Of a stretch of DNA of 64,000 bases, positions 28,176 to 44,278 are shown in pieces. Position 1 is the first letter of the stretch. Every line of letters starts with the position of its first letter. The notes beneath the pieces were generated by a model, which did no database searches, had not been told where the DNA came from, and saw nothing but the letters and a program-made list of their open reading frames with translations. A program made the position numbers and the translations under genes. The stretch lies in IMG/VR virus record IMGVR_UViG_3300020438_000007, positions 1-64,000 of that record; one strand, 5' to 3'.

Positions 28176-30731
28176 ATGGCTCGTCAGGGAATATTTACTG
28201 GATTCACACCGAATGATGGTCTGGGAGATTCCCTTGCCTTAGGCGCATCCAAAGTAAATCAAAACTTTACAGAGATTTATACTACCTTCGGTGACGGTAC
28301 AAATCTCAGTGTTAATGCAGGGAGTGCTGGTACTTGGACGAAGGCAGGGAACACAGGAATTTACACAAGTAAGAACGTTGGCATCGGTACGACTGATCCT
28401 ACTGCTTCTTTATTTGTATCAGGTAATGTTCAATTAACAGGTATTACAACTGGAACATTCGTTGGAGATGGTTCTGGTCTAACAGGTGTGACCGCAGTTG
28501 GTCAAGGTGTTGTTATAAAAGACAGTGGAACACTAGTTGGTGTTGCACAAAGTCTTAACTTAGATAAGAATTTAACTGTCACACAGGTGTTTGGTGGAAA
28601 TGTAACAGTTTCTGCTGCTGATACTGTAGGATTTGCGTTCACTTCTGGATTCTCTACTACATCTGCATACGCAAACGTTTCTGGAGTATCAACCACTGCA
28701 ACAACTGCTGGGTTTGCTGACACTGCAACACTGGCATACACTGCAAACTTCGCCACGATTGCTGGTATCGTAACTTACTCACAGGCATCTGGTATTGCAA
28801 CCAACTCTGGTGTTGCTGAGTATGCAAAGGTAGCTGGTATCGCATCATACGTTGCCAATGCAGGGTTCTCAACCATGGCGGGGTATGCACATACCGCAGG
28901 CATCGCCACAGTCGCACAGAATTTAACAGGAACTCCTTCTATTGTTATCGACAATATCAATTCTGCGATTGGTATTGTGACCATGCCTGGTCAAGGTAGT
29001 AAGATGCGTTTCGACTTTGACGCAACAGGTGATCTACCCCAATCAACCTCTTGGAGAGGTATGTTTGCATGGGCAAACAACACCAAGACTGCATATGTTT
29101 CCAGTGGAACCACAATGGGTGGTTACAATGGTTGGAGACAGATACTTCATCAGGATGACGAAGGCAACTACTTTACAGTAGGTGTCATAACTGCATCCAA
29201 GTTTGCTGGTGATGGATCTGGACTTACAAACTTACCATCAACAGATAGTATTTGGAGAACAAACTCCACTGGTATTCACACTCTCAGCAACGTTGGTCTT
29301 GGAACTACCAACACAGAAGGATATAAACTTAACGTACTAGGTAACTTAAAGTTACAAGGCAGACTGGACGGAACTGCAACAGATAATATACTACCTCACT
29401 TGTGGTCAACCTACGCATCTCTACCATCATCATCCACTTATCATGGTGCATTTGCTCACGTTCATGAGACAGGAAAGGCATACTATGCACACGCTGGTTG
29501 GAATGAACTGGTCAATAAAAATCAAGATCAATCGGTTGGAACTGGAACTGAAAACTATAGAGTTGGTGTTCTAACTGCAATATCATTTACTGGAGATGGA
29601 TCTGGTTTAAGTAATATCAATGTATCATACGCAGCTTCAGCTGGTATTGCAACTCTATCACAAGGACTAGAAGGTAAACCAGACATCTTAGTTGCTAACA
29701 TCAACTGTACTGGTATTACTACTAGTGCAACATTCGTTGGAGATGGTTCTGGACTGACAGGTATCACTGCATCTGGTAGTGGTATTATCATCAGAGAAGG
29801 CGGCACACTCGTAGGAACTATTGGAACTGTAAACTTCGGAACTGGTTTCGATGTTTCCCCTGCATCTGCTGGTGTAGTAACAGTCACCACATCAGGTGGC
29901 GGCGGTGGTGGTATCTCTGGTATTGTATATCAGGAGGAAGGATCTACTGTTGGTACTGCACAAACCGTTAACTTCATTGGTGTTGCATGTACAGTAACAC
30001 ATAGTGGTGGAGTTGCAACTGTCAACTTGGCAGGAGCAGTACCATTCACAGGACCTGCTGCAAGCATAACTGCACTTGACATTACACAGTATGAAGCAGC
30101 ATATGGATGGGGTGATCACTCTGGTGCTGGATATCTGACAGGTATAGGTGGTCAAGGATTAGGTAATCTAAACAACGTTTCTAATGTATCTCCAAGTACA
30201 AGTGATGTATTAACATGGAGTGGATCACAGTGGGCACCAGCCGCACCTACAGGTGGTAGTGGTGGAATAATAATTAAAGAAGAAGGAAGTCAAGTTGCAG
30301 CAGGAATCACCTCACTTAATTTTGTTGGATCTACTGTAAGTGCAACTGCTTCTGGAACAGATGGAACTATCACAATCACTTCTGGTGGTGGTGGAGGTGG
30401 CAGTATTTCCACAACTGGAGTTGGAACATACACTGCATCTGCTGGTGTGGAACAACAGGTAGATTCATGGTCTAAGTTAAGTTACTCTGGTGCAGAGTAC
30501 ACATTTATGATTGGTCTAGGAACATTCAGACAATCACAGAAAGTTCTTGTCATGCACGATGGAACTACGGCGTTCTCACAAGAATATGGCATCATGTTCT
30601 CTCCAGAACAACAGGTATCAATCGCTGCAACTGTAAGTAGTAACAACGTTCTAGTTAAAGTTACTCCTGAGTCAGGGATATCTGGTTTATCAACATACAG
30701 ATTCGTTAAAACTTTTATTGAGAACCTATGA
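28176..30731 (+). CDS. Tail fibre-like virion protein
   Basis: gp9/gp10-like N-terminus (NDGLGDSL..GASKVNQNFTEIY); VGIGTT and FxGDGSGLT repeats; Gly/Thr-rich. Confidence 0.85.
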   Translation: MARQGIFTGFTPNDGLGDSLALGASKVNQNFTEIYTTFGDGTNLSVNAGSAGTWTKAGNTGIYTSKNVGIGTTDPTASLFVSGNVQLTGITTGTFVGDGSGLTGVTAVGQGVVIKDSGTLVGVAQSLNLDKNLTVTQVFGGNVTVSAADTVGFAFTSGFSTTSAYANVSGVSTTATTAGFADTATLAYTANFATIAGIVTYSQASGIATNSGVAEYAKVAGIASYVANAGFSTMAGYAHTAGIATVAQNLTGTPSIVIDNINSAIGIVTMPGQGSKMRFDFDATGDLPQSTSWRGMFAWANNTKTAYVSSGTTMGGYNGWRQILHQDDEGNYFTVGVITASKFAGDGSGLTNLPSTDSIWRTNSTGIHTLSNVGLGTTNTEGYKLNVLGNLKLQGRLDGTATDNILPHLWSTYASLPSSSTYHGAFAHVHETGKAYYAHAGWNELVNKNQDQSVGTGTENYRVGVLTAISFTGDGSGLSNINVSYAASAGIATLSQGLEGKPDILVANINCTGITTSATFVGDGSGLTGITASGSGIIIREGGTLVGTIGTVNFGTGFDVSPASAGVVTVTTSGGGGGGISGIVYQEEGSTVGTAQTVNFIGVACTVTHSGGVATVNLAGAVPFTGPAASITALDITQYEAAYGWGDHSGAGYLTGIGGQGLGNLNNVSNVSPSTSDVLTWSGSQWAPAAPTGGSGGIIIKEEGSQVAAGITSLNFVGSTVSATASGTDGTITITSGGGGGGSISTTGVGTYTASAGVEQQVDSWSKLSYSGAEYTFMIGLGTFRQSQKVLVMHDGTTAFSQEYGIMFSPEQQVSIAATVSSNNVLVKVTPESGISGLSTYRFVKTFIENL

Positions 30732-32944
30732 TTCATACTAGTACGAACACTCTCGATAGGTCAGGCCTGGCTACCAAGCCAGTTGGAACTGATGACAAGA
30801 AGGCATACTCTATTAAATGTTATACCAAAAATGATTGGGTATTCATTCATGAGGAACTAGAGAAAGATGGATCATTGGAAGATAACATTCCTGATCCAAC
30901 AATAGTATGTCCTGACAAGAAGGAACATAGTGATACCAGAGCAACTTACATGTTGACTGATGCGGAAGCAGAGGATTTAAGAAAACATGAGAAGGTACAG
31001 TGGGTCTGTATTGACTATGATGTATATCCAGGCAACTATTCTCCAGATCCAAAAGATATTATCGCTGGTGTACAAAAATTTGGTAGGTTCAATAAGACAG
31101 TATCTAACTACAGAGCATGGAATACTTCGCCAACAGGCACTAGGCCACCAACAACCCAGGCTGGTATTGGTGCAACAGATAAGAACAGAACTGGATATCA
31201 AATACTAAGACATACACAAAAAGAAAACCCTTGGGATGCAACATCCACTGGGCTGACTGGATCTGATCATCTAATAATAGAGACTGAACCAAAGCAATTA
31301 GGTGATGGCACTGGTGTAGATGCAATCGTAGCTGATGATGGTTTCTGGATTGCACACCCAGAATTTGTAACAACTGACGATGATCCTGTAGGTTGGTCAA
31401 CAGGAAACGCATTAACATGGAGTGGTATATCTACAACTCCAGGCACATGTGGTGTTCTAGATGTACTTCTTGATGGTCCATATTATATTGACCCAGCATG
31501 GTTCAATGCAGATCCAGGCAATAGATTGATTCAACGTTGGGACGGAACAACAGTACCAGTAGAGTCTGTTGCAAGAGCATGGTGGTCTGATTCAAGTCAG
31601 AGATCAGTAGGATTCTCTACCATTGGCACTACAAATGGTTTCAGTGCTTCATATAGTAGACAAAGTTGCAACGGAAGTAACACACAGAAACCAACCAACG
31701 GTTCTGATCACGGAACTCAGTGTTCTGGTCAAGTATATGGTAAGAATTATGGATCGGCATATAACTGTAACAAATGGGTATTGAATGGTATCGGTGGTTC
31801 TAATGCTGGAATCAATGGTAGTCAATTTGATATACAGAAACTCTTCCACTTATATAAACCAAACTATGATAGACATTCTGCTATCACTGGTAAAGAAAAT
31901 GATACTAAAAACCCCACACTATCAAGTAATAGTTGGGGTTACAGATCTAGCTCTATACATACCACAGGTTACTATTGGTATAGACCATCAGCAACAGATG
32001 GATCAGAGACTGGCGTATCCTATAGTAGTGGTGCTGAACCAGAATTCATTGATTTACTAGGCGCATATGGTGATAGTAATAGGTGTAAAGGAGAGATGGT
32101 AGAAAGTTCTGTAACTGCTGCTGGTGATGAGTTAGCTGAGGCGGGAGTTATCTTCGTCTGTGCTGCTGGTAATAGTAATCAGACTCAATGTAGTCCTGGC
32201 GATCTTGACTTTGATAATTATTGGGCTACCAGTTCTCAAGGTAACAGTTCTTCCTTAGAATCCGCAACTCATAGTGAATTTGGATTGACATGTTATAACA
32301 CTATCAATAGAAGAGGATGGCCACAGGCACTAGGTAAAACCACATCTGGATTATCTACTGCTGGAACTGAATATGCTGCTATTAATATTGGTGCATTAGA
32401 TGATCAAATTACAAGTAGTGGACTAGGTGGTAACACCACAGACTACAAAGAAAAGAAAGTGAACTATAGTGATATGGGAACAGGTATTGATTGTTATGGT
32501 GCTGCTGATGACACACTCACAGCAGATGGAAGAGCATCATCTCTTACATATGTTCACCCAGAAACATATACTGGTCTCACACTTACCCCATATGATATTG
32601 ATTTTGGTGGTACTAGTTCTGGATGTCCTACATGTGCTGGTTGGTTAACTACCAAACTACAATATAATAGAGATTGGACTTGGAGAGAAATAAAAGATTG
32701 GTTGAAAAACCAGTGTGGTAGTCAATCTCCTGACAGATTTTACTATGGTGATAACATTACATCTTTCACTGCAACAACAGCTGCATGGGAAGATATGTAT
32801 TCCGTTCAGATGTATGGTCAAGGACCTGTTGTCATCTGGGATGCTCCTACTGGTTCACCTACCGAACCCAAAAAACCTGAGATAAAAATCACCAACTCCC
32901 CTAACCTTAAAATCAGTGGTGGAGTTGAGATAAAGTTCTCTTAA
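30728..32944 (+). CDS. Subtilisin-like S8 serine peptidase
   Basis: D (VADDG), H (DHGTQCSG), oxyanion N (AAGN) and S (GGTSSGCP); N-terminal propeptide-like region. Confidence 0.85.
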   Translation: MIHTSTNTLDRSGLATKPVGTDDKKAYSIKCYTKNDWVFIHEELEKDGSLEDNIPDPTIVCPDKKEHSDTRATYMLTDAEAEDLRKHEKVQWVCIDYDVYPGNYSPDPKDIIAGVQKFGRFNKTVSNYRAWNTSPTGTRPPTTQAGIGATDKNRTGYQILRHTQKENPWDATSTGLTGSDHLIIETEPKQLGDGTGVDAIVADDGFWIAHPEFVTTDDDPVGWSTGNALTWSGISTTPGTCGVLDVLLDGPYYIDPAWFNADPGNRLIQRWDGTTVPVESVARAWWSDSSQRSVGFSTIGTTNGFSASYSRQSCNGSNTQKPTNGSDHGTQCSGQVYGKNYGSAYNCNKWVLNGIGGSNAGINGSQFDIQKLFHLYKPNYDRHSAITGKENDTKNPTLSSNSWGYRSSSIHTTGYYWYRPSATDGSETGVSYSSGAEPEFIDLLGAYGDSNRCKGEMVESSVTAAGDELAEAGVIFVCAAGNSNQTQCSPGDLDFDNYWATSSQGNSSSLESATHSEFGLTCYNTINRRGWPQALGKTTSGLSTAGTEYAAINIGALDDQITSSGLGGNTTDYKEKKVNYSDMGTGIDCYGAADDTLTADGRASSLTYVHPETYTGLTLTPYDIDFGGTSSGCPTCAGWLTTKLQYNRDWTWREIKDWLKNQCGSQSPDRFYYGDNITSFTATTAAWEDMYSVQMYGQGPVVIWDAPTGSPTEPKKPEIKITNSPNLKISGGVEIKFS

Positions 32945-32950
32945 TAAATA
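32944..32950 (+). promoter_or_regulatory. Late promoter ATAAATA
   Basis: Intergenic match upstream of 32969. Confidence 0.7.
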
Positions 32951-32968
32951 CTAAAAAGTACTAGCGAA

Positions 32969-33832
32969 ATGGCAGAAAAATCATTTGGTGTAAAGGACCT
33001 GAATATAGTTGGAGCGAGTGGTGATCCAACTATAGAAAGTAATGGCGACCTTAATTTAAAAGCTGGTCAAGTTGCAATCCAAACTAACACCACAATCACA
33101 GGAGTAGTTACTGCAACATCATTCAGTGGTAATGGATCAGGATTAACAGGAGTTACTGCTTCTGGAACTGGTATCATCATCAAAGATGGTGGATCAACAG
33201 TTGGAACTGCTGGAACCATAGACTTTGGAGCAAACTTAAGTGTGTCCGCACTATCAGGTGCAGCTGTGACTGTGACTGCGAGTGCTGGCGGAATCACTAT
33301 TGAAGATGAAGGCAGTGCATTATCCACAGCTGCAACCACACTAGACTTTGTTGGAGGTGGAGTGGTTGCATCTGGTACTGGAGCAGAAAAAACAATTACT
33401 ATTGCTGGTGCATCTGTCCCTGCAAACTTAACTGCAACAACCTTAGATGTAGTTGGAATCGTAACTGCTGGTAGTTTTGTTACCGATCTAATTACTGGAA
33501 ACGGAAGTGATCGTGGATTCTGTACTAGATATTATGTAACTGCAAACGGTGCTTCAGACTATAGATTTGCAGGGCCTGGAATACTTAATACTGTAGGTGA
33601 TCCTACTCTATATCTACATAGAGGATTCACATACTTGTTTGAGAACTCAACTGGTAGTTCACACCCATTCCGTATTCAATTTACAGGAACAACTACAGGT
33701 GTGGGAACATATGTCAGTGGAAGTCAGAATGGAGCACAGATATTTACAATACCTCACGATGCTCCACTCAGTTATGAATATCAATGTACTGCACATGCCA
33801 GTATGAAAGGAACATTTATTATCCCTAATTAG
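32969..33832 (+). CDS. Short fibre-like protein with a C-terminal cupredoxin-like domain
   Basis: FSGNGSGLT and IEDEG..LDFVG fibre repeats; HPF...YQCTAHASM. Confidence 0.75.
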   Translation: MAEKSFGVKDLNIVGASGDPTIESNGDLNLKAGQVAIQTNTTITGVVTATSFSGNGSGLTGVTASGTGIIIKDGGSTVGTAGTIDFGANLSVSALSGAAVTVTASAGGITIEDEGSALSTAATTLDFVGGGVVASGTGAEKTITIAGASVPANLTATTLDVVGIVTAGSFVTDLITGNGSDRGFCTRYYVTANGASDYRFAGPGILNTVGDPTLYLHRGFTYLFENSTGSSHPFRIQFTGTTTGVGTYVSGSQNGAQIFTIPHDAPLSYEYQCTAHASMKGTFIIPN

Positions 33833-33833
33833 T

Positions 33834-34436
33834 ATGTCACCATTAGCATTTGGAATTGGAAAGTCAAGGGGAGCTCAATTTGATGCTCCAGTATTCTACT
33901 CAAATTTATTACAGTTTTACTGGCACTGGACTGACGGTAAGGACTTTGATCTCAGATGTGAGTTCATTCGTCCTACTCAATTAGCTGGTCTAGTAGTAGG
34001 AACTGACAAACTATCTCAGATTGTAGATAGTGGTGGTTCAGTTACATACATGAAATGGGGTGGAGATAACACCCAAGACACAGAAGGATATGAAGGTGTA
34101 TACATTGACATAAATGCAATCAAAACTGTGCCAGGCGGACTTGCAAACAATGTTATAGAACTAGATTTCAGAGGTATGTGGTATGCAGAAGTTGGCACAA
34201 ACCCAGTAGTAGTAAGAGGTTCTGCATATCAAGGCGGAACAATGTCATTAGAAAGAGACACACCTAACGTGCCTGGATTTGGTTTTGTTAACGTAGGTTA
34301 CGCTCAATCCTTTACAAATTACAAAGAAAGTATACCCAAAGTTGTTACAAGTGTTGACCGAGAAGGAACTGGTCAACGATTAGGCCGCGCCATCATTGAC
34401 TTAAACACATTTGAGATAACTTTTCTAGATTACTAG
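33834..34436 (+). CDS. Hypothetical protein (probably structural)
   Basis: 200 aa, beta-rich, coupled to the fibre gene. Confidence 0.75.
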   Translation: MSPLAFGIGKSRGAQFDAPVFYSNLLQFYWHWTDGKDFDLRCEFIRPTQLAGLVVGTDKLSQIVDSGGSVTYMKWGGDNTQDTEGYEGVYIDINAIKTVPGGLANNVIELDFRGMWYAEVGTNPVVVRGSAYQGGTMSLERDTPNVPGFGFVNVGYAQSFTNYKESIPKVVTSVDREGTGQRLGRAIIDLNTFEITFLDY

Positions 34437-34471: not shown

Positions 34472-34479
34472 TATAAATA
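34472..34479 (+). promoter_or_regulatory. T4-consensus late promoter TATAAATA
   Basis: Exact match upstream of 34506. Confidence 0.75.
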
Positions 34480-34505
34480 CAGGCAGACTAAGAGTGGGAA
34501 ATCAC

Positions 34506-35018
34506 ATGAAAAGATTTTTACCTTTAATTATGCTTTTGATGGCGGCTCCCATGGCAGCGAGGGCCGATTTAACACACCGTTTGACTACGAGTACACAACT
34601 TACCGTAGACAGCGCAGCAACTCAGGCCACAAGGATTGGGTCAACCTATAGTGTACAAGGTACAAACATTACCGCAGGCACAATGGGTGGACTAACAAAG
34701 TCTTCTGGGGATAGTATTTCAACAGCGGCTGCTAGTCAAACTCAAGGTGCATACACAGTTACAACTGCTGGCTCTGCCTTCAGCTTAAGTGAATCATTCA
34801 CTTTAGGCGATGCAGTAAATCCAATCGGAACTGGTGTTGACGTATCTTCGGGTGTTGTCGTTGACATGCCTGCCTATGGTAGTGTAATCACTCAAAGTGG
34901 CGGCGTGGCAGGGAGTCTTGCTGGTACAATTACTTCAGCGGGCGTTATGACACTAACAGCTGGCGGGGCAGGCACATCTGCTACTGGGCAATTTGTTTCA
35001 GAAATCTCGATAGATTGA
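34506..35018 (+). CDS. Exported Thr/Ser/Gly-rich protein
   Basis: Signal peptide MKRFLPLIMLLMAAPMAARA|D. Confidence 0.8.
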   Translation: MKRFLPLIMLLMAAPMAARADLTHRLTTSTQLTVDSAATQATRIGSTYSVQGTNITAGTMGGLTKSSGDSISTAAASQTQGAYTVTTAGSAFSLSESFTLGDAVNPIGTGVDVSSGVVVDMPAYGSVITQSGGVAGSLAGTITSAGVMTLTAGGAGTSATGQFVSEISID

Positions 35019-35027
35019 ACATGAGTA

Positions 35028-35522
35028 ATGAAGAAACTTCTAACGACATTTGTGACAGTTGCGGTTGCCATTGTCCTTGCGAATGTGAGGACTGCGAAGG
35101 CTGTGCCTGTGGTGCCTAATTTCCAACAGGGCAGCATGACATCTCGGACCGAAACGACTTCGACAGTGACCGAGACTATAAATTCAATTGATATGAGGAC
35201 AGGATGGGAGTATTCGGTAACGGGCACAGGGGTTTCCAACAATGGAGAATCACTCAACCCACCAGTGAGTACATCAACAGTGAATGTAACACCAAGCAGT
35301 TCAGCGGGTTCAACAGGGGGAGCATTAGTAACAGGACAAGTAACAAGTTCCTTCGACTCCTTAGACTTCTCCAACCCAAACAGTTTTACAATAACAAATC
35401 CAGGCGGAAGCTTTCAATTCACACAGAGCTACCAAGGGCCTGGCATGACCAACCAGACAATAATACAGAGAGTGACCGCCATAGAAAGCGTGACCGACAC
35501 AACTTCAACGTTTACACAATAG
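35028..35522 (+). CDS. Exported Thr/Ser-rich protein
   Basis: Signal peptide ending TAKA|VPVVPNF. Confidence 0.8.
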   Translation: MKKLLTTFVTVAVAIVLANVRTAKAVPVVPNFQQGSMTSRTETTSTVTETINSIDMRTGWEYSVTGTGVSNNGESLNPPVSTSTVNVTPSSSAGSTGGALVTGQVTSSFDSLDFSNPNSFTITNPGGSFQFTQSYQGPGMTNQTIIQRVTAIESVTDTTSTFTQ

Positions 35523-36358
35523 GTACATTAGTACTATCAATTATCTCTCCAACGGCGGCATTAGCAGAGAATGTTGGAGGGGTATCAGCGACAGCAAATC
35601 CAATAGCGAACAGCTCGGGCAGTGTTACAAATCAAGCTATACAGGTGCTACAAGGACCGTATATAACTAATACTTACGGTGGTGGCGTGCAATGTCAAGG
35701 TGCTACTGTCAACTTCACACCCTACTTACAATTTGCGGACAGTAGAAAAGATCCTTGGAGAGATTTCTACATGGAGCCACAATATAATACTACTGACTTT
35801 ACTGGTCGTACTTCACAACAAACTGTCACAGTAAAAAACTATCCTTGGGAGTCATGGTATGACACAAGGACTAAAGCAGATGGAACTAGATGGTTCCCCG
35901 ATGGTGAAGACATGGATATAGTTGTAGATGTAGATGGTCCCAATGGCATACCAGACAATCCAGGCCAAGTACTCTGGGAGAAACCTGTTCGTACTAATAT
36001 GGTAGCAAACCAGTCATTCAATCTTGGTTTATCTGCTACTCTTTCTATACCACTCAACAGAGGTTTGCAAAAGAAATGTAGTGAAGCAGCACAGGCACAA
36101 AATGATATGCAAAAACAATTACTTGCCAATAAGCGCCTCGACTTTGAACTAGCAAGACTCAAGAATTGTGGTGAATTGAAAAAAACTGGCATATTTTTCC
36201 ACCCCAAATCACCATACCATTCTGTATGTGCTGACGTGGTAGTTACAAATCCTGGCGGTCAACTACTTCCGCACACACATGACATGCCTAAACCAAATTG
36301 GAAAGAAGAAAAACCAAATGGCAGTGCATCTGATCTAGAAACATTTCAAATACCCTAA
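35204..36358 (+). CDS. Exported or membrane protein; start codon uncertain
   Basis: Signal-like segment IGTLVLSIISPTAALA|E near 35520. The only in-frame ATG upstream of it is at 35204, inside the previous gene. Confidence 0.7.
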   Translation: MGVFGNGHRGFQQWRITQPTSEYINSECNTKQFSGFNRGSISNRTSNKFLRLLRLLQPKQFYNNKSRRKLSIHTELPRAWHDQPDNNTESDRHRKRDRHNFNVYTIGTLVLSIISPTAALAENVGGVSATANPIANSSGSVTNQAIQVLQGPYITNTYGGGVQCQGATVNFTPYLQFADSRKDPWRDFYMEPQYNTTDFTGRTSQQTVTVKNYPWESWYDTRTKADGTRWFPDGEDMDIVVDVDGPNGIPDNPGQVLWEKPVRTNMVANQSFNLGLSATLSIPLNRGLQKKCSEAAQAQNDMQKQLLANKRLDFELARLKNCGELKKTGIFFHPKSPYHSVCADVVVTNPGGQLLPHTHDMPKPNWKEEKPNGSASDLETFQIP

Positions 36359-40978: not shown

Positions 40979-43900
40979 TTAAGCTTCTAGTTGTAGGATA
41001 GTAAGATAGCCTGTAATAGACTGGGTATGAGTAGAAAGGTTTTTGATTGATACATAAATGGTTGTCCCGACAGGACTGTCCATGTTACCACCTATAGTGA
41101 ATGGAGAGAATGTTCCACTGGTTTCTACACCAACAGATCTAAACTCACCAACAATTCCAGATCCTGGCGAAGGGTCTTCCCCTTCACTACGAGTGAGGTC
41201 CGCAGCTCTAGATGCACTATCAGTATATATGCGAATCCACGCATCAGTGGACACTCCCACCTTCATCAAAGCATAAGATTTGAATCCAGTTATGTCAGTG
41301 TTACCAATACCATATCTTGCAATGGCAGTAGTAGTCCCAACAACAGTTGATCTTGATTGTAATGATCCACCTGATGCGGTAACTGAAGCAATTCCAGCAG
41401 CAGAGTAAGTAACATCAAGTCCATCACCAAAGTTTACAGTTCTTGCAGAACCAATGTTGACATCATTATCTTCAACAACAATACCAGATCCAGTGGCATT
41501 GACGTTCAATAGATTAGAACCATCAATCGCTGGTAGAATACCAGTGATATTACCAGCAGGGACATCAGTAAGTCCAGAAGCAGAACCTTTAAATGATGTG
41601 GAGGATGTTACACCAGTAACATTCAACCCATATGGAGATGCAGTAACAGCCGAACCAACTGCAAGTTGATTGGCGATAGTTGCATTGTGTCCAACCTCAA
41701 GACTTCTATAAACTTTTACAAGTCTGTCTGGAGTTGACCCTGCACTATAGATTCTTAATGCTTCTTTCTGAACAGCAGGGATGCCTGGATCAGTGGTCTT
41801 GAATATAAAACTTCCATCCTCGCCAGAAGAATCTGTTCCAGAACTTATCTGGAATATCATCTGATTCTGTAAGGAATCATCTAGTTTTATCCAACCATAA
41901 GTACCCAACAATAAGGTTTGATTATTTAAACGTAAATTACCAATCAGTTGAGTCTGACCCTGCACTGTGAGAGGGAATGTTGGATTAGTTGTGCCTATAC
42001 CTATGTTGCTAAGGGTATGAATACCAGCATTTGTACTTACAAATTGTTGTTCACTACCAGTAATAGTAGCAACTCCAGCACCAAATGTTACTCCGAGATT
42101 GTCTGCAAAATCAACAGTCGCAGCAGTACCAACCACACTACCACTGTTTCTAATTTCAACACCAGTACCAGATGCAACCACACCAGTAAGTTGTGATCCA
42201 TCCAATGAAGGCAAAGCACCTGTCAACTGTGAAGCATTTAATGATCCATAGAATCCTGTCGCAGATACAATACCAGAAACAGTCAGTGCCTCTGTGATAA
42301 CAGTGGTTTTTATACCAACATCACCACTTGCATTGATAGTCTGACGAATGTTTCCTTGTCCATCAGATAATACAACAAAGTTAGAGGTAGTTCTGATGTC
42401 AAGATCAGCACTATTACCTCGATACGAACCTAGTAATACGTTAAAAGATCCAGTTGTTAAGTCTCGGCCTGCGTCATTACCTAGTGCAAGGTTGAAAGAT
42501 CCAGAAGTAGTACCATAAAGAGATAAGTTACCGACAGCAACGTTGTATCCACTACCACCACTCAATGATCTTAATGATTGATCACCAACACCAATATTAT
42601 TATTAGAACCACTACCTATAATTGAGTTACCAACCTTGAGGTTGACTCCACTAGGAGTTTGAATCCTTCCAGACACAACTGTAGTAACACCTGTGTTGTT
42701 AAATCCATCAACATCAAGAGTGCCTTTGATATTTGCATTACCATTAGCGGTGAATACCTTGGCTGGATCTGGGCATGTCATACCCACACCAACTCTTGCA
42801 GTGGTTCCAATACCTATCTGGCCAGGCAATCCATCGTTATTCCATATCGAACCAGTAGCAGTACTACTAATCGTTACGATACCACAAGTAGGACTAGTAT
42901 TGATTAGAACATTATTACCTTCAACAATAGAAGTAACAATACCTGTTAGTTTATTACCTGATCCATAATACTCACCAATTACTGTCACTCCAAGAGCCAC
43001 AGTCTCCAAACGCTTCGTTCCATTTTGGAATAGCTCTACCGCTCCGCCTGGTTTAAAGTTTGCTAACTGGTTGGAGTTGGCATCAGTAATTTTTATGTCC
43101 GAATCTGATACTAATTTGAACGCAGTTCCATCATATGTTATATGTGCATCATCAGCATCTCCAAAGTTTGCCTTAAGTAAATCTGGTATCTTTAATCCAC
43201 CATTAGATGCCTTAGTAATCGTCACATTACCGTAGACTTCAAGAGCTTGATTCGCTATAGTGGTTCCTATACCAACATTAGATGATGTAACAATACCACT
43301 GACATTCTTTGTCCAATATCCAGTTCCAAAACCAGCGACACCACCAGCGAAGTCAATCGCAACGTTAGTTATACCTGTAATTTTACCCTGATTATTGACT
43401 ACAATCTGTGGAACTATTGTGGTATTACCATACGTTCCATCACTCGCACCAGTTAAATTAATTAATGCTCCACCATTACCATAAAATTCTGCAGCAGTAA
43501 TGATACCAGTAGTGTTTACACTAGAATCACCCTGTAATGTTACAGCAGCATCTGCAAGAGTGGCCTTTGGAGCAGTAACCTGTGCAGAGTATGATAGTAC
43601 AGACCAGTTAGAACCACCTACGGCAACTACCCAGTCACCAGAATATACACTAGAGATGCCTGGGTTGGAATAGGTTGCAATACCAACATCAATACCACCC
43701 TTAGAGACAATAAAATAGTCACCTGTAGTAATACCAGATGACGCAAGTGTCTGTCCTATGCCAGTGTATGCTCTTCCCTGTCCAACAACTGTCAGTGCGG
43801 TGACAACACCAGCAACTGCATCAAAGAATCCAACGATGTTTAAGTTGGTTCCAAGAGCATTGATCTGTGATTGAAGAACCGCAGCACCTACATTGGTTGC

Positions 43901-44278
43901 AATACCAGTAAGTTGAGATCCATCTCCATGATAAGTTGTTGCAGTAACAATACCACCAGCAACAAATCCAGACGCACCAACTACGTCTGTAGTAAACCCA
44001 ACGTCATTAGTAAACGATGATAGTACAGATGGTGTGTTTGTAAAATTATTATAGTCTAGGTAATATGATGGTGTTTGTCCATTGAGATTCAGAGAGTTAG
44101 TCGAAATCCCAGCAGTGAGAGCAAAACCAGTAGTATTAGAGGCGTTTAAAGTTAGACCGTCACCAATCGAATTATAAATCTCATTGAAGTTTGCGTTAAC
44201 TTTGATGGCACCCTGTCTCAGGGTATCACCTGTGCCGTCATTACTACTTTGCCCAGCATTTATTAACTGTTTCGACAT
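40979..44278 (-). CDS. Long tail fibre-like protein
   Basis: N-terminal NDGTGDTLRQGAIKVNANFNEIY; VGIGTT, GDGSQLT and NxAxG repeats. Confidence 0.88.
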   Translation of the reverse strand: MSKQLINAGQSSNDGTGDTLRQGAIKVNANFNEIYNSIGDGLTLNASNTTGFALTAGISTNSLNLNGQTPSYYLDYNNFTNTPSVLSSFTNDVGFTTDVVGASGFVAGGIVTATTYHGDGSQLTGIATNVGAAVLQSQINALGTNLNIVGFFDAVAGVVTALTVVGQGRAYTGIGQTLASSGITTGDYFIVSKGGIDVGIATYSNPGISSVYSGDWVVAVGGSNWSVLSYSAQVTAPKATLADAAVTLQGDSSVNTTGIITAAEFYGNGGALINLTGASDGTYGNTTIVPQIVVNNQGKITGITNVAIDFAGGVAGFGTGYWTKNVSGIVTSSNVGIGTTIANQALEVYGNVTITKASNGGLKIPDLLKANFGDADDAHITYDGTAFKLVSDSDIKITDANSNQLANFKPGGAVELFQNGTKRLETVALGVTVIGEYYGSGNKLTGIVTSIVEGNNVLINTSPTCGIVTISSTATGSIWNNDGLPGQIGIGTTARVGVGMTCPDPAKVFTANGNANIKGTLDVDGFNNTGVTTVVSGRIQTPSGVNLKVGNSIIGSGSNNNIGVGDQSLRSLSGGSGYNVAVGNLSLYGTTSGSFNLALGNDAGRDLTTGSFNVLLGSYRGNSADLDIRTTSNFVVLSDGQGNIRQTINASGDVGIKTTVITEALTVSGIVSATGFYGSLNASQLTGALPSLDGSQLTGVVASGTGVEIRNSGSVVGTAATVDFADNLGVTFGAGVATITGSEQQFVSTNAGIHTLSNIGIGTTNPTFPLTVQGQTQLIGNLRLNNQTLLLGTYGWIKLDDSLQNQMIFQISSGTDSSGEDGSFIFKTTDPGIPAVQKEALRIYSAGSTPDRLVKVYRSLEVGHNATIANQLAVGSAVTASPYGLNVTGVTSSTSFKGSASGLTDVPAGNITGILPAIDGSNLLNVNATGSGIVVEDNDVNIGSARTVNFGDGLDVTYSAAGIASVTASGGSLQSRSTVVGTTTAIARYGIGNTDITGFKSYALMKVGVSTDAWIRIYTDSASRAADLTRSEGEDPSPGSGIVGEFRSVGVETSGTFSPFTIGGNMDSPVGTTIYVSIKNLSTHTQSITGYLTILQLEA

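What the first reader, a model, noticed from the sequence alone, without database searches (positions are those of the whole stretch)
32969..33832. Fibre-type protein ending in a cupredoxin-like domain with a full type-1 copper ligand set
Seen: fibre repeats shared with the two long fibres (GxxIKDGGSTVGTA..IDFG), then a ~95 aa beta domain with HPF...YQCTAHASMKG. Knowledge: His...Cys-x2-His-x(2-4)-Met is the blue-copper site of plastocyanin and amicyanin. Inference: a copper-binding, possibly redox-active appendage on the virion, which could be a copper analogue of the proposed iron-carrying fibre strategy or a receptor-binding tip.
Basis: partly seen in the sequence, partly recalled or inferred. 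Interest (0 to 1): 0.65.

Follow-up and report, generated by a model that had tools for sequence, protein, structure and literature searches.

The report
Blue-copper-like domain on cyanophage fibre
A short tail-fibre-type protein of a marine cyanophage ends in a domain that has the fold and all four metal-binding residues of blue-copper proteins such as amicyanin. The same module sits on baseplate and fibre proteins of nearly all T4-like cyanophages, so these virus particles may carry copper, which nobody has yet measured.

Summary
ORF 32969-33832 (+) encodes 287 aa. Its N-terminal part shares fibre repeats with two long fibres in the window. Residues ~183-287 form a beta domain carrying His232, Cys273, His276 and Met279.

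The module is a very large phage family, with 2379 clusters at 50% identity and hits in 321 phage records, all cyanophages or uncultured marine viruses. All four ligands are present in 172 of 187 domain copies, and most exceptions are truncated copies. The Cys-x2-His-x2-Met spacing is that of amicyanin.

The protein is not a T4 gp9 orthologue, although its S-SSM7 counterpart is annotated so. It lacks the gp9/gp10 N-terminal anchor, and the positional gp9 of this genome lies elsewhere and has no such domain. It is not a PetE plastocyanin either.

A relative that carries the module (S-SM1 gp9) was detected in virions by mass spectrometry.

Copper occupancy, redox activity and the biological role remain untested. 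I found no paper describing this. It is a new variant of a known kind.

The parts
32969..33832 (+). Whole gene: 287-aa fibre-type protein ending in a cupredoxin-like domain
   Evidence: ORF list and translation. PHROG 677 E 1.4e-43 on residues 110-286 and PHROG 6942 (tail fibre) E 3.3e-5 on residues 47-106. The S-SSM7 counterpart SSSM7_231 is 63.8% identical and sits in the same gene order.
32969..33163 (+). N-terminal segment (residues 1-65). It is conserved among the short relatives and contains a fibre motif of the F-x-G-x-G-S-G-L-T-G type. It has no gp9/gp10-type anchor.
   Evidence: Alignment A2. It is the most conserved region among 121 close homologues, at 92% mean identity. No Pfam match, PF07880 included.
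33164..33406 (+). Two ~40-aa fibre repeats (residues 66-105 and 106-146), shared with the 851-aa and 1099-aa fibres
   Evidence: Motif scan. BLASTP of the N-terminal part against the genome's ORFs. Low pLDDT and no secondary structure as a monomer.
33515..33829 (+). Cupredoxin-like domain (residues 183-287), a nine-strand beta sandwich
33662..33664 (+). His232 codon (cac), the putative first copper ligand, just before strand 4
   Evidence: Aligns on the ligand His of amicyanin. Conserved in 179/184 domain copies.
33785..33805 (+). Ligand loop Cys273-x2-His276-x2-Met279 between the last two strands
   Evidence: Aligns on the Cys-x2-His-x2-Met loop of amicyanin. Cys 178/180, His 178/180, Met 179/180. 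Loop length 2+2 in 163 copies, with variants 2+3, 3+2 and 4+2 that keep the ligands. Cys273 is the only conserved cysteine.
28176..30731 (+). Context: 851-aa fibre with a gp9/gp10-type N-terminus and the same repeats; first gene of the cluster
   Evidence: The first 51 aa are 47% identical to the N-terminus of S-RIM8 gp9, E 8e-12. PF07880 20.5 bits, below the cut-off. PHROG 6942 and 677.
30728..32944 (+). Context: 738-aa subtilase-like (Peptidase_S8) protein between the fibre and this gene
   Evidence: PF00082 E 4.1e-10. Same gene order in S-SSM7 and S-SCSM2R.
33834..34436 (+). Context: 200-aa gene starting 2 nt after the stop codon; function unknown, viral only
   Evidence: PHROG 24956. Atlas neighbours are all viral hypothetical proteins and there is no PDB match.
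40979..44278 (-). Context: 1099-aa fibre with a gp9/gp10-type N-terminal anchor and the same repeats
   Evidence: PF07880 44.6 bits. BLASTP E 7e-16 to residues 21-105 of the 287-aa protein.

Best explanation
**What it is.** This is a late structural gene of a large T4-like cyanomyovirus. The genome is 231 kb, and its closest isolate is Synechococcus phage S-SSM7 (genus Lipsvirus). The protein has a fibre-type N-terminal half made of the same repeats as two long fibres of the phage. Its C-terminal ~105 residues are a phage-specific member of the cupredoxin superfamily.

**The metal site.** The domain keeps the complete type-1 (blue) copper site with the short amicyanin-type spacing: His232 before strand 4, and Cys273-x2-His276-x2-Met279 in the loop between the last two strands.

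**Most likely mechanism (inferred).** The site holds one metal ion, most probably copper, that staples the loops at one end of the beta sandwich. This makes a rigid terminal knob. The knob's job is binding, either to a conserved host-surface component or to another virion part, rather than bulk electron transfer or copper delivery.

**Modular use.** The same module ends the gp9-type baseplate protein of most T4-like cyanophages. It is also reused, singly or in tandem, in many other cyanophage fibre and baseplate proteins.

**Shown versus inferred.** Shown: the gene, its fibre kinship, the fold, the ligand set and its conservation, the modular spread, and virion presence of one relative. Inferred: metal occupancy, copper as the metal, and the binding role.
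For: **Fold.**
- AF2 on a 50-sequence alignment gives pLDDT 89 overall and >95 for domain residues 21-123.
- Foldseek against the PDB returns almost only cupredoxins: the nitrite reductase type-1 Cu domain 2dv6_A at E 5.5e-6, then rusticyanin, amicyanin and plastocyanin.

**Sequence.**
- All 10 PDB sequence hits are cupredoxins (E 0.11-1.5). The four residues align on the amicyanin ligands.
- A Pfam-verified bacterial cupredoxin (L008:3731-4078, PF00127 35 bits) shares the C-terminal ligand stretch, hhalign probability 96%.
- 5 of 66 long family members reach PF00127 themselves.

**Conservation.**
- 2379 clusters at 50% identity carry the domain.
- All four ligands are present in 172 of 187 copies. 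Most exceptions are truncated copies.
- The ligand loop changes length while keeping Cys, His and Met.
- Cys273 is the only conserved cysteine, so a disulphide role is unlikely.

**Structural context.**
- Repeats are shared with two fibres.
- PHROG tail families match.
- Co-occurring domains in the family are all fibre or adhesin modules: T4_gp9_10_N, Mtd_N, YadA_head, Peptidase_S74, CBM_4_9 and C1q.
- The domain is C-terminal in 91 of 150 representatives.
- S-SM1 gp9 (T4-GC398), which carries the module, was detected in purified virions with 25 peptide counts (PMC3037559 Table S8).

**Occurrence in nature.** Contigs identical to the gene occur in marine DNA runs of many studies and in contigs of RNA libraries. 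That is presence only, not proof of transcription.
Against: - No Pfam cupredoxin model matches this protein, even at E 10.
- Sequence matches to solved cupredoxins are not significant on their own.
- I could not measure ligand geometry, because no coordinates are returned. Copper is also not among the ligands the complex tool offers.
- From general knowledge: cellular cupredoxins receive copper outside the cytoplasm, whereas virion proteins fold in the cytoplasm, where free copper is vanishingly low. Zinc loading or an empty site is therefore a real possibility.
- The residue after the first His is Pro, not the Asn that is usual in plastocyanin, azurin and amicyanin (sequence plus general knowledge).
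- The phage encodes no HMA-type copper chaperone.
- This protein itself has not been shown in virions.
- It lacks the gp9/gp10 anchor, so its attachment point is unknown.
- Trimer formation could not be tested.
- The N-terminal half folds poorly as a monomer.
Confidence: 0.55

Rival explanations
1. The domain is only a cupredoxin-shaped beta sandwich used as a structural bead, like Ig-like domains on other phages. The site is empty or holds zinc, and the four residues are kept for folding reasons.
For: - No Pfam cupredoxin hit.
- The domain also occurs internally and in tandem in long fibres, like a shaft bead.
- Virion proteins fold in the cytoplasm, which is copper-poor (general knowledge).
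- The phage encodes no copper chaperone.
Against: - Near-invariance of exactly the four type-1 ligands in 172 of 187 copies, while neighbouring loop residues vary.
- The ligands are kept through loop-length changes.
- A lone invariant Cys in an extracellular protein is hard to explain without a metal.
Confidence: 0.2
2. The copper centre is redox-active in infection. It would sense the redox or light state at the host surface and gate adsorption or baseplate triggering, or exchange electrons with a host surface protein.
For: - The complete type-1 site is the hallmark of electron-transfer proteins.
- It is conserved across essentially all T4-like cyanophage lineages in the phage collection.
- Among close relatives, variable residues fall in and beside the ligand loop (positions 275, 277, 278) and at 205-210, 252-254 and 267-268. 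I take these to be neighbouring loops, but no coordinates were available to check. In cupredoxins the partner-docking face lies around the exposed His ligand (general knowledge).
Against: - No redox partner is identified.
- The module also occurs in internal, non-terminal positions.
- The idea rests on analogy only.
Confidence: 0.1
3. It is the phage's gp9, the baseplate wedge tail-fibre connector, as its S-SSM7 orthologue is annotated.
For: - PHROG 677 match at E 1.4e-43.
- GenBank and RefSeq annotation of S-SSM7 SSSM7_231, and the T4-GC398 grouping.
Against: - The PHROG match covers only profile positions 228-409, which is the cupredoxin module.
- The protein has no PF07880 anchor and no match to T4 gp9 structures.
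- The genome has a positional gp9 of 340 aa with PF07880 (44.9 bits) in the baseplate module at 148-149 kb, and that protein lacks the cupredoxin domain.
Confidence: 0.05
4. It is a PetE-type plastocyanin, an auxiliary metabolic gene for photosynthetic electron transport, as the S-SCSM2R homologue is labelled.
For: - The 'PetE' label in PQ898602.
- The cupredoxin fold.
Against: - No PF00127 match.
- No signal peptide is visible in the N-terminus, though no predictor was run.
- The domain is fused to fibre repeats.
- The gene lies in a fibre gene cluster.
- The loop is Cys-x2-His-x2-Met. From general knowledge, the plastocyanin spacing is x2/x4.
- The family architecture is that of fibres.
Confidence: 0.02

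Closest known systems
Amicyanin and plastocyanin type mononuclear blue-copper proteins (cupredoxins, Pfam PF00127)
   Same: - Greek-key beta sandwich.
- One His before strand 4, plus Cys, His and Met in the last loop.
- The Cys-x2-His-x2-Met spacing and the Y-x-Y-x-C-T-x-H-x-x-M-x-G context match amicyanin.
   Different: - It is a module fused to a phage fibre.
- It has no export signal.
- It gets no Pfam match.
- Pro rather than Asn follows the first His.
- Copper binding is unproven.
N-terminal type-1 copper domain of the three-domain nitrite reductase of Hyphomicrobium denitrificans (PDB 2dv6, 6tfo, 6tfd)
   Different: Sequence identity is 18%. There it feeds electrons to an enzyme, and no enzyme domain is present here.
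Cyanophage 'gp9 baseplate wedge tail fibre connector' (T4-GC398, PHROG 677), for example in S-RIM8, S-SM1 and S-SSM5
   Same: It has the same C-terminal cupredoxin-like module (40-50% identity). S-SM1 gp9 is a virion protein.
   Different: Those proteins start with the T4 gp9/gp10 N-terminal anchor (PF07880, 35 bits in S-RIM8) and lie in the baseplate module. The window's protein has fibre repeats instead and lies in a fibre and subtilase cluster.
Coliphage T4 gp9 (PDB 1s2e, 1qex)
   Same: Only indirect: other cyanophage proteins combine its N-terminal domain with this module.
   Different: There is no detectable similarity to this protein. From general knowledge, the T4 gp9 C-terminal domain is not a cupredoxin and has no such metal site.
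Metal sites in phage fibres (iron bound by His in the T4 long-fibre tip gp37) and the 'Ferrojan horse' hypothesis
   Same: A metal ion would be held in a virion appendage (inference).
   Different: From general knowledge, those sites are His clusters on the trimer axis of a fibre. Here there is a complete single-chain blue-copper site in a globular domain. The amount of copper per virion would be negligible as cargo (own estimate).
Cyanophage PetE (plastocyanin auxiliary metabolic gene, T4-GC225)
   Same: Cupredoxin superfamily; encoded by cyanomyoviruses (PMC3037559).
   Different: From general knowledge, PetE is free-standing, exported and metabolic. This module is fused, structural and not matched by PF00127. 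No PF00127 gene was found in this genome.

Membership tests
Cupredoxin superfamily, type-1 (blue) copper site | Greek-key beta sandwich of 7-9 strands, superposable on solved cupredoxins | tested here: met
Cupredoxin superfamily, type-1 (blue) copper site | Ligand set: one His upstream, plus Cys, His and Met in the loop between the last two strands | tested here: met
   His232, Cys273, His276 and Met279 align on the amicyanin ligands. In the model they lie before strand 4 and between the last two strands. All four are present in 172 of 187 family copies.
Cupredoxin superfamily, type-1 (blue) copper site | The four side chains converge on one point in three dimensions | not testable with these tools
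   Structure prediction and fold search return no coordinates. Support comes only from topology and from sequence and structure alignments to amicyanin.
Cupredoxin superfamily, type-1 (blue) copper site | Bound copper with a ~600 nm absorption band and narrow EPR hyperfine splitting | not testable with these tools
   This needs protein chemistry.
Pfam PF00127 Copper-bind / PF13473 Cupredoxin_1 | Score above the family's gathering threshold | tested here: not met
   No Pfam family at E up to 10 for the domain or up to 1 for the whole protein. 5 of 66 long relatives do reach PF00127, best E 3e-5; I did not check where on those proteins the hits fall.
T4 gp9 baseplate wedge tail-fibre connector | N-terminal gp9/gp10 domain (PF07880) | tested here: not met
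   Absent from this protein. PF07880 is found in three other ORFs of the genome.
T4 gp9 baseplate wedge tail-fibre connector | Similarity to the T4 gp9 middle and C-terminal domains (solved structures) | tested here: not met
   No gp9 chain among the PDB hits at E up to 10.
T4 gp9 baseplate wedge tail-fibre connector | Position in the baseplate gene module next to gp8 and gp10 homologues | tested here: not met
   The positional gp9 (340 aa, PF07880 44.9 bits) lies at about 148.3-149.3 kb of the genome, next to a 3000-aa protein. This gene lies at 33 kb, between a subtilase and a protein of unknown function.
PHROG 677 (cyanophage 'gp9') | Match to the family profile | tested here: met
   E 1.4e-43, but only to profile positions 228-409 of 412, which is the C-terminal module.
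PetE plastocyanin (auxiliary metabolic gene) | Free-standing ~100-120 aa protein with a PF00127 match, an export signal and Cys-x2-His-x4-Met spacing | tested here: not met
   The protein is 287 aa and fused to fibre repeats. It has no PF00127 match. Read by eye, the N-terminus has no hydrophobic signal; no predictor was run. The spacing is x2/x2.
Phage tail-fibre proteins | Shares repeat modules with other fibre proteins of the same phage and matches fibre families | tested here: met
   BLASTP E 3e-28 and 7e-16 to the 851-aa and 1099-aa fibres. PHROG 6942 E 3.3e-5.
Phage tail-fibre proteins | Homotrimer; present in the virion | not tested
Virion evidence exists only for a relative with a different N-terminus, S-SM1 gp9.

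The most novel reading that the evidence does not exclude
Nearly all marine T4-like cyanophages would carry working blue-copper redox centres on their baseplates and fibres, the first redox metalloprotein known in a virion. The centre would act as a sensor of the redox or light state at the cyanobacterial surface and would gate adsorption or tail triggering.
Probability: 0.1. Interest if true: 0.9.

Novelty: new variant of a known kind. Interest (0 to 1): 0.62.

Why it matters
**If the site holds copper.**
- Cyanophage particles would be the first virions known to carry a blue-copper centre.
- Cyanophages are among the most abundant viruses in the sea.
- The centre sits in a module conserved across almost the whole T4-like cyanophage group, so it is probably important for infection.
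- That would open simple tests linking trace-metal chemistry to phage adsorption: chelators, redox agents and light.
- It would also give structural biologists a marker domain for the still unsolved cyanomyovirus baseplate.

**Practical point.** The widespread 'gp9' and occasional 'PetE' labels on these proteins are transferred through one shared module. They should not be read as orthology or as a photosynthesis gene.

**If the site is empty or holds zinc.** The finding shrinks to a new phage-specific branch of the cupredoxin fold used as a fibre bead.

Tried and rejected
**Literature.** I ran seven searches: cyanophage with cupredoxin; blue copper; copper-binding with baseplate; plastocyanin-like with tail fibre; cupredoxin with tail fibre; cupredoxin with virion; and gp9 with plastocyanin. 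None found a paper on this module. The library is incomplete, so prior description elsewhere is not excluded.

**Trimer test.** There is no result either way.

**Profile search against the PDB.** Cupredoxins came top, but at E 0.07-0.7, which is not significant.

**Cellular relatives.**
- The six-sequence alignment had no stretch conserved enough to build search patterns.
- The three-sequence alignment gave narrow patterns and found only two loci. One is a likely mis-binned phage contig and one is a true bacterial cupredoxin.
- This does not measure how far the family reaches into cells.

**Other copies or copper genes in this genome.**
- No second copy of the domain.
- No PF00127 plastocyanin.
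- No HMA-type copper chaperone.

**T4-type late promoter.** TATAAATA occurs twice in the window against 4.5 expected, and neither copy lies upstream of this gene. I make no promoter claim.

**RNA libraries.** Contigs of RNA libraries cover the gene. The tool warns that this does not show transcription.

**Downstream 200-aa gene.** No family or structure lead was found.

**Rejected readings.** A true gp9 orthologue, a PetE auxiliary metabolic gene, and copper cargo or a 'Trojan horse'. The last would involve too few atoms per particle by my own estimate.

Full report
**1. The observation**

The ORF runs from 32969 to 33832 on the + strand and encodes 287 residues. Homologues begin with the same residues, so the start is right.

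The N-terminal half is of fibre type:
- BLASTP of residues 1-165 against all ORFs of the genome finds that 851-aa protein (E 3e-28) and the 1099-aa ORF 40979-44278 on the minus strand (E 7e-16).

The C-terminal part carries HPF (His232) and the stretch with Cys273, His276 and Met279.

The bare pattern C-x2-H-x(2-4)-M is not remarkable. It occurs ten times in the six-frame ORFs of the genome. With an upstream His it occurs once, here.

**2. The source genome**

The window is the first 64 kb of a 230,739-base virus record that is rated 99% complete.

The nearest isolate is Synechococcus phage S-SSM7 (Kyanoviridae, Lipsvirus). It has the same gene order: long fibre, S8 subtilase-like protein, this gene, then a 200-aa gene. 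S-SCSM2R shares the fibre, subtilase and this gene.

[quoted passage not shown] The S-SCSM2R counterpart is annotated 'PetE'.

**3. Fold**

Pfam finds nothing in the protein. PHROG 677 matches residues 110-286, but only to the last 180 positions of its profile.

A sequence search of the PDB gave ten weak hits (E 0.11-1.5). All are cupredoxins, and the alignments to amicyanin put His232, Cys273, His276 and Met279 on the four copper ligands.

I folded residues 165-287 with a 50-sequence alignment of diverse relatives. The model has pLDDT 89 overall and above 95 from domain residue 21 onward, with nine strands.

Structure searches with this model:
- Foldseek against the PDB returned cupredoxins almost exclusively: the type-1 copper domain of the three-domain nitrite reductase 2dv6 at E 5.5e-6, then rusticyanin, amicyanin, plastocyanin and small laccases.

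In the model the first His lies just before strand 4, and Cys, His and Met lie at the end of the penultimate strand and in the loop to the last strand. That is the canonical arrangement. I could not measure distances, because no coordinates are returned.

**4. Family and conservation**

A search with the domain alone against one representative per 50%-identity cluster found 2379 proteins at E <= 0.001 and 1171 at E <= 1e-10.

In the 187 domain copies of the best 150 proteins:

| Ligand | Copies that keep it |
|---|---|
| His232 | 179 of 184 |
| Cys273 | 178 of 180 |
| His276 | 178 of 180 |
| Met279 | 179 of 180 |
| All four together | 172 of 187 |

- Most of the rest are truncated copies.
- The spacing is C-x2-H-x2-M in 163 copies. 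The variants 2+3, 3+2 and 4+2 keep the ligands.
- Cys273 is the only conserved cysteine.

From general knowledge, this x2/x2 spacing is the short loop of amicyanin. Plastocyanin has x2/x4.

Links to recognised cupredoxins:
- A bacterial cupredoxin found in a Gemmatimonadota assembly passes Pfam PF00127 (35 bits). It shares the C-terminal ligand stretch with the phage profile at 96% hhalign probability.
- Five of 66 long family members reach PF00127 themselves.
- The ESM Atlas names one neighbouring viral cluster 'Blue (type 1) copper domain-containing protein'.

**5. Where the module occurs**

In the phage collection, 321 records have it. All are Synechococcus or Prochlorococcus phages or uncultured marine viruses.

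Examples:
- In S-RIM8 and most others it ends a ~408-aa protein in the baseplate module. That protein begins with the T4 gp9/gp10 N-terminal domain: PF07880 at 35 bits, with PDB hits to T4 gp10 and gp9 N-termini.
- In S-SKS1 it is internal to a 1727-aa baseplate protein. In Bellamy it lies near the C-terminus of a 481-aa protein.
- BFVD and Atlas structure searches find it in proteins named long tail fibre proximal subunit, tail fibre-like protein, S8 peptidase and others, all viral.

Across the 150 representatives:
- The domain is C-terminal in 91.
- It occurs two or three times in 28.
- It is combined with T4_gp9_10_N, Mtd_N, YadA_head, Peptidase_S74, CBM_4_9 and C1q.

It is therefore a mobile module of cyanophage fibre and baseplate proteins.

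**6. It is not gp9 and not PetE**

Against gp9:
- This protein has no PF07880 domain and no similarity to T4 gp9.
- Three other ORFs of the genome carry PF07880: the two long fibres in the window, and a 340-aa protein in the baseplate module at about 148-149 kb.
- That 340-aa protein is the positional gp9, and it has no cupredoxin domain.
- The 'gp9' label of the S-SSM7 counterpart is therefore a transfer through the shared C-terminal module.

Against PetE:
- The protein is fused to fibre repeats.
- Read by eye, it has no signal sequence; no predictor was run.
- It is not matched by PF00127.
- It has a different loop spacing.
- No PF00127 gene was found anywhere in this genome.

**7. Virion evidence and occurrence in nature**

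Supplementary Table 8 of Sullivan et al. 2010 (PMC3037559) lists T4-GC398 'gp9' as detected with 25 peptide counts. I read the first pair of columns as S-SM1, the phage analysed in that study. S-SM1 gp9 carries the module. The S-SSM7 member of the same gene cluster, 735 nt, is the counterpart of the window's gene.

The stretch 30728-34436 is held by marine, seawater, estuary and viral metagenome runs; the 20 holding runs come from 13 studies. Identical contigs occur in two oligo-dT RNA libraries. The tool warns that this shows presence, not transcription.

**8. Mechanism**

Shown:
- a fibre-type structural protein;
- a cupredoxin fold;
- a complete and strongly conserved type-1 ligand set;
- modular reuse in virion proteins.

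Inferred:
- The site binds a metal, most likely copper.
- The metal rigidifies a terminal knob whose role is binding.

I favour a binding or structural role over electron transfer for two reasons. No partner is known, and the module also occurs internally.

I doubt that it determines host range. Among 121 close relatives the domain is as conserved as the rest of the protein (86% mean identity against 86% for the repeats and 92% for the N-terminus). The more variable positions include residues inside the ligand loop and positions I take to be neighbouring loops.

Against copper:
- From general knowledge, virion proteins fold in the cytoplasm, where free copper is extremely scarce. Cupredoxins made there often take up zinc.
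- The phage has no HMA chaperone.
- The residue after the first His is Pro, not the usual Asn.

As cargo the copper would be trivial. With the 18 copies that gp9 has in T4, or even a few tens of sites, a virion would carry tens of atoms. A cell's quota is orders of magnitude larger, and seawater holds nanomolar copper. This is my own estimate.

**9. Novelty**

Automatic pipelines have already noticed the resemblance ('PetE', 'Blue (type 1) copper domain-containing protein'). I found no paper that describes or tests it.

I file it as a new variant of a known kind: a cupredoxin with a full blue-copper site used as a module of virion proteins.

**10. Limits**

- No coordinates were available, so ligand geometry was not measured.
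- The N-terminal half is poorly modelled as a monomer.
- The survey of cellular genomes was narrow.
- No alternative genetic code was used.

Noticed in passing
window 30728-32944 (+): A 738-aa subtilase-like protein (PF00082, E 4.1e-10) lies between the long fibre and the cupredoxin fibre. Its start overlaps the fibre's stop codon. Read by eye, stretches resembling the Asp, His and Ser catalytic motifs are visible in the translation. The same order is kept in S-SSM7 and S-SCSM2R, and in ACG-2014e and ACG-2014h an S8 peptidase protein itself contains the cupredoxin-like fold (BFVD hits). It may be a virion-associated protease.
   Followed up: partly
window 28176-30731 (+), window 40979-44278 (-), and genome about 148.3-149.3 kb (-) (L009:769-1791): Three proteins of this phage start with the T4 gp9/gp10-type N-terminal anchor (PF07880: 20.5, 44.6 and 44.9 bits). 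Two of them are long fibres. This suggests several different appendages plug into the baseplate in the gp9/gp10 manner.
   Followed up: partly
window 34494-35018, 35028-35522 and 35204-36358 (+): Small ORFs just downstream have hydrophobic, signal-peptide-like stretches: the first two at their N-termini, the third within the ORF as listed, so its true start may be later. They are rich in Thr, Ser and Gly. A TATAAATA motif lies at 34472-34479, directly upstream of the first. They may be exported or membrane proteins of unknown role.
   Followed up: no
window 33834-34436 (+): A 200-aa gene starts 2 nt after the stop codon of the cupredoxin fibre and is conserved next to it in S-SSM7. It has only viral hypothetical relatives, no PDB match and PHROG 24956 (unknown function). 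It could be an assembly factor or a partner.
   Followed up: partly
L007 (PAWX01000033.1, labelled Gammaproteobacteria MAG): An 11.7-kb contig of a 'Gammaproteobacteria' assembly carries an 82%-identical copy of the domain, with a similar run of ORF sizes (244, 200 and 176 aa). It is most likely a mis-binned cyanophage contig.
   Followed up: partly
L008:3731-4078 (+) (Gemmatimonadota MAG): A 116-aa bacterial lipoprotein-type cupredoxin (PF00127, 35 bits) has a C-terminal ligand stretch almost identical to the phage family consensus. It is a possible pointer to the cellular lineage from which the phage module came.
   Followed up: partly
Family members P0019, P0072, P0096, P0121, P0154, P0176, P0177 (alignment A2): The ligand loop varies in length within the family (C-x4-H-x2-M and C-x2-H-x3-M variants) while keeping all ligands. 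In known cupredoxins (general knowledge) such changes tune the site, which may indicate functional diversification.
   Followed up: no
Family members in alignment A5: Five of 66 long relatives match Pfam PF25489 (At5g54830-like domain), best E 8.1e-7. I did not examine where the match falls or what it means.
   Followed up: no
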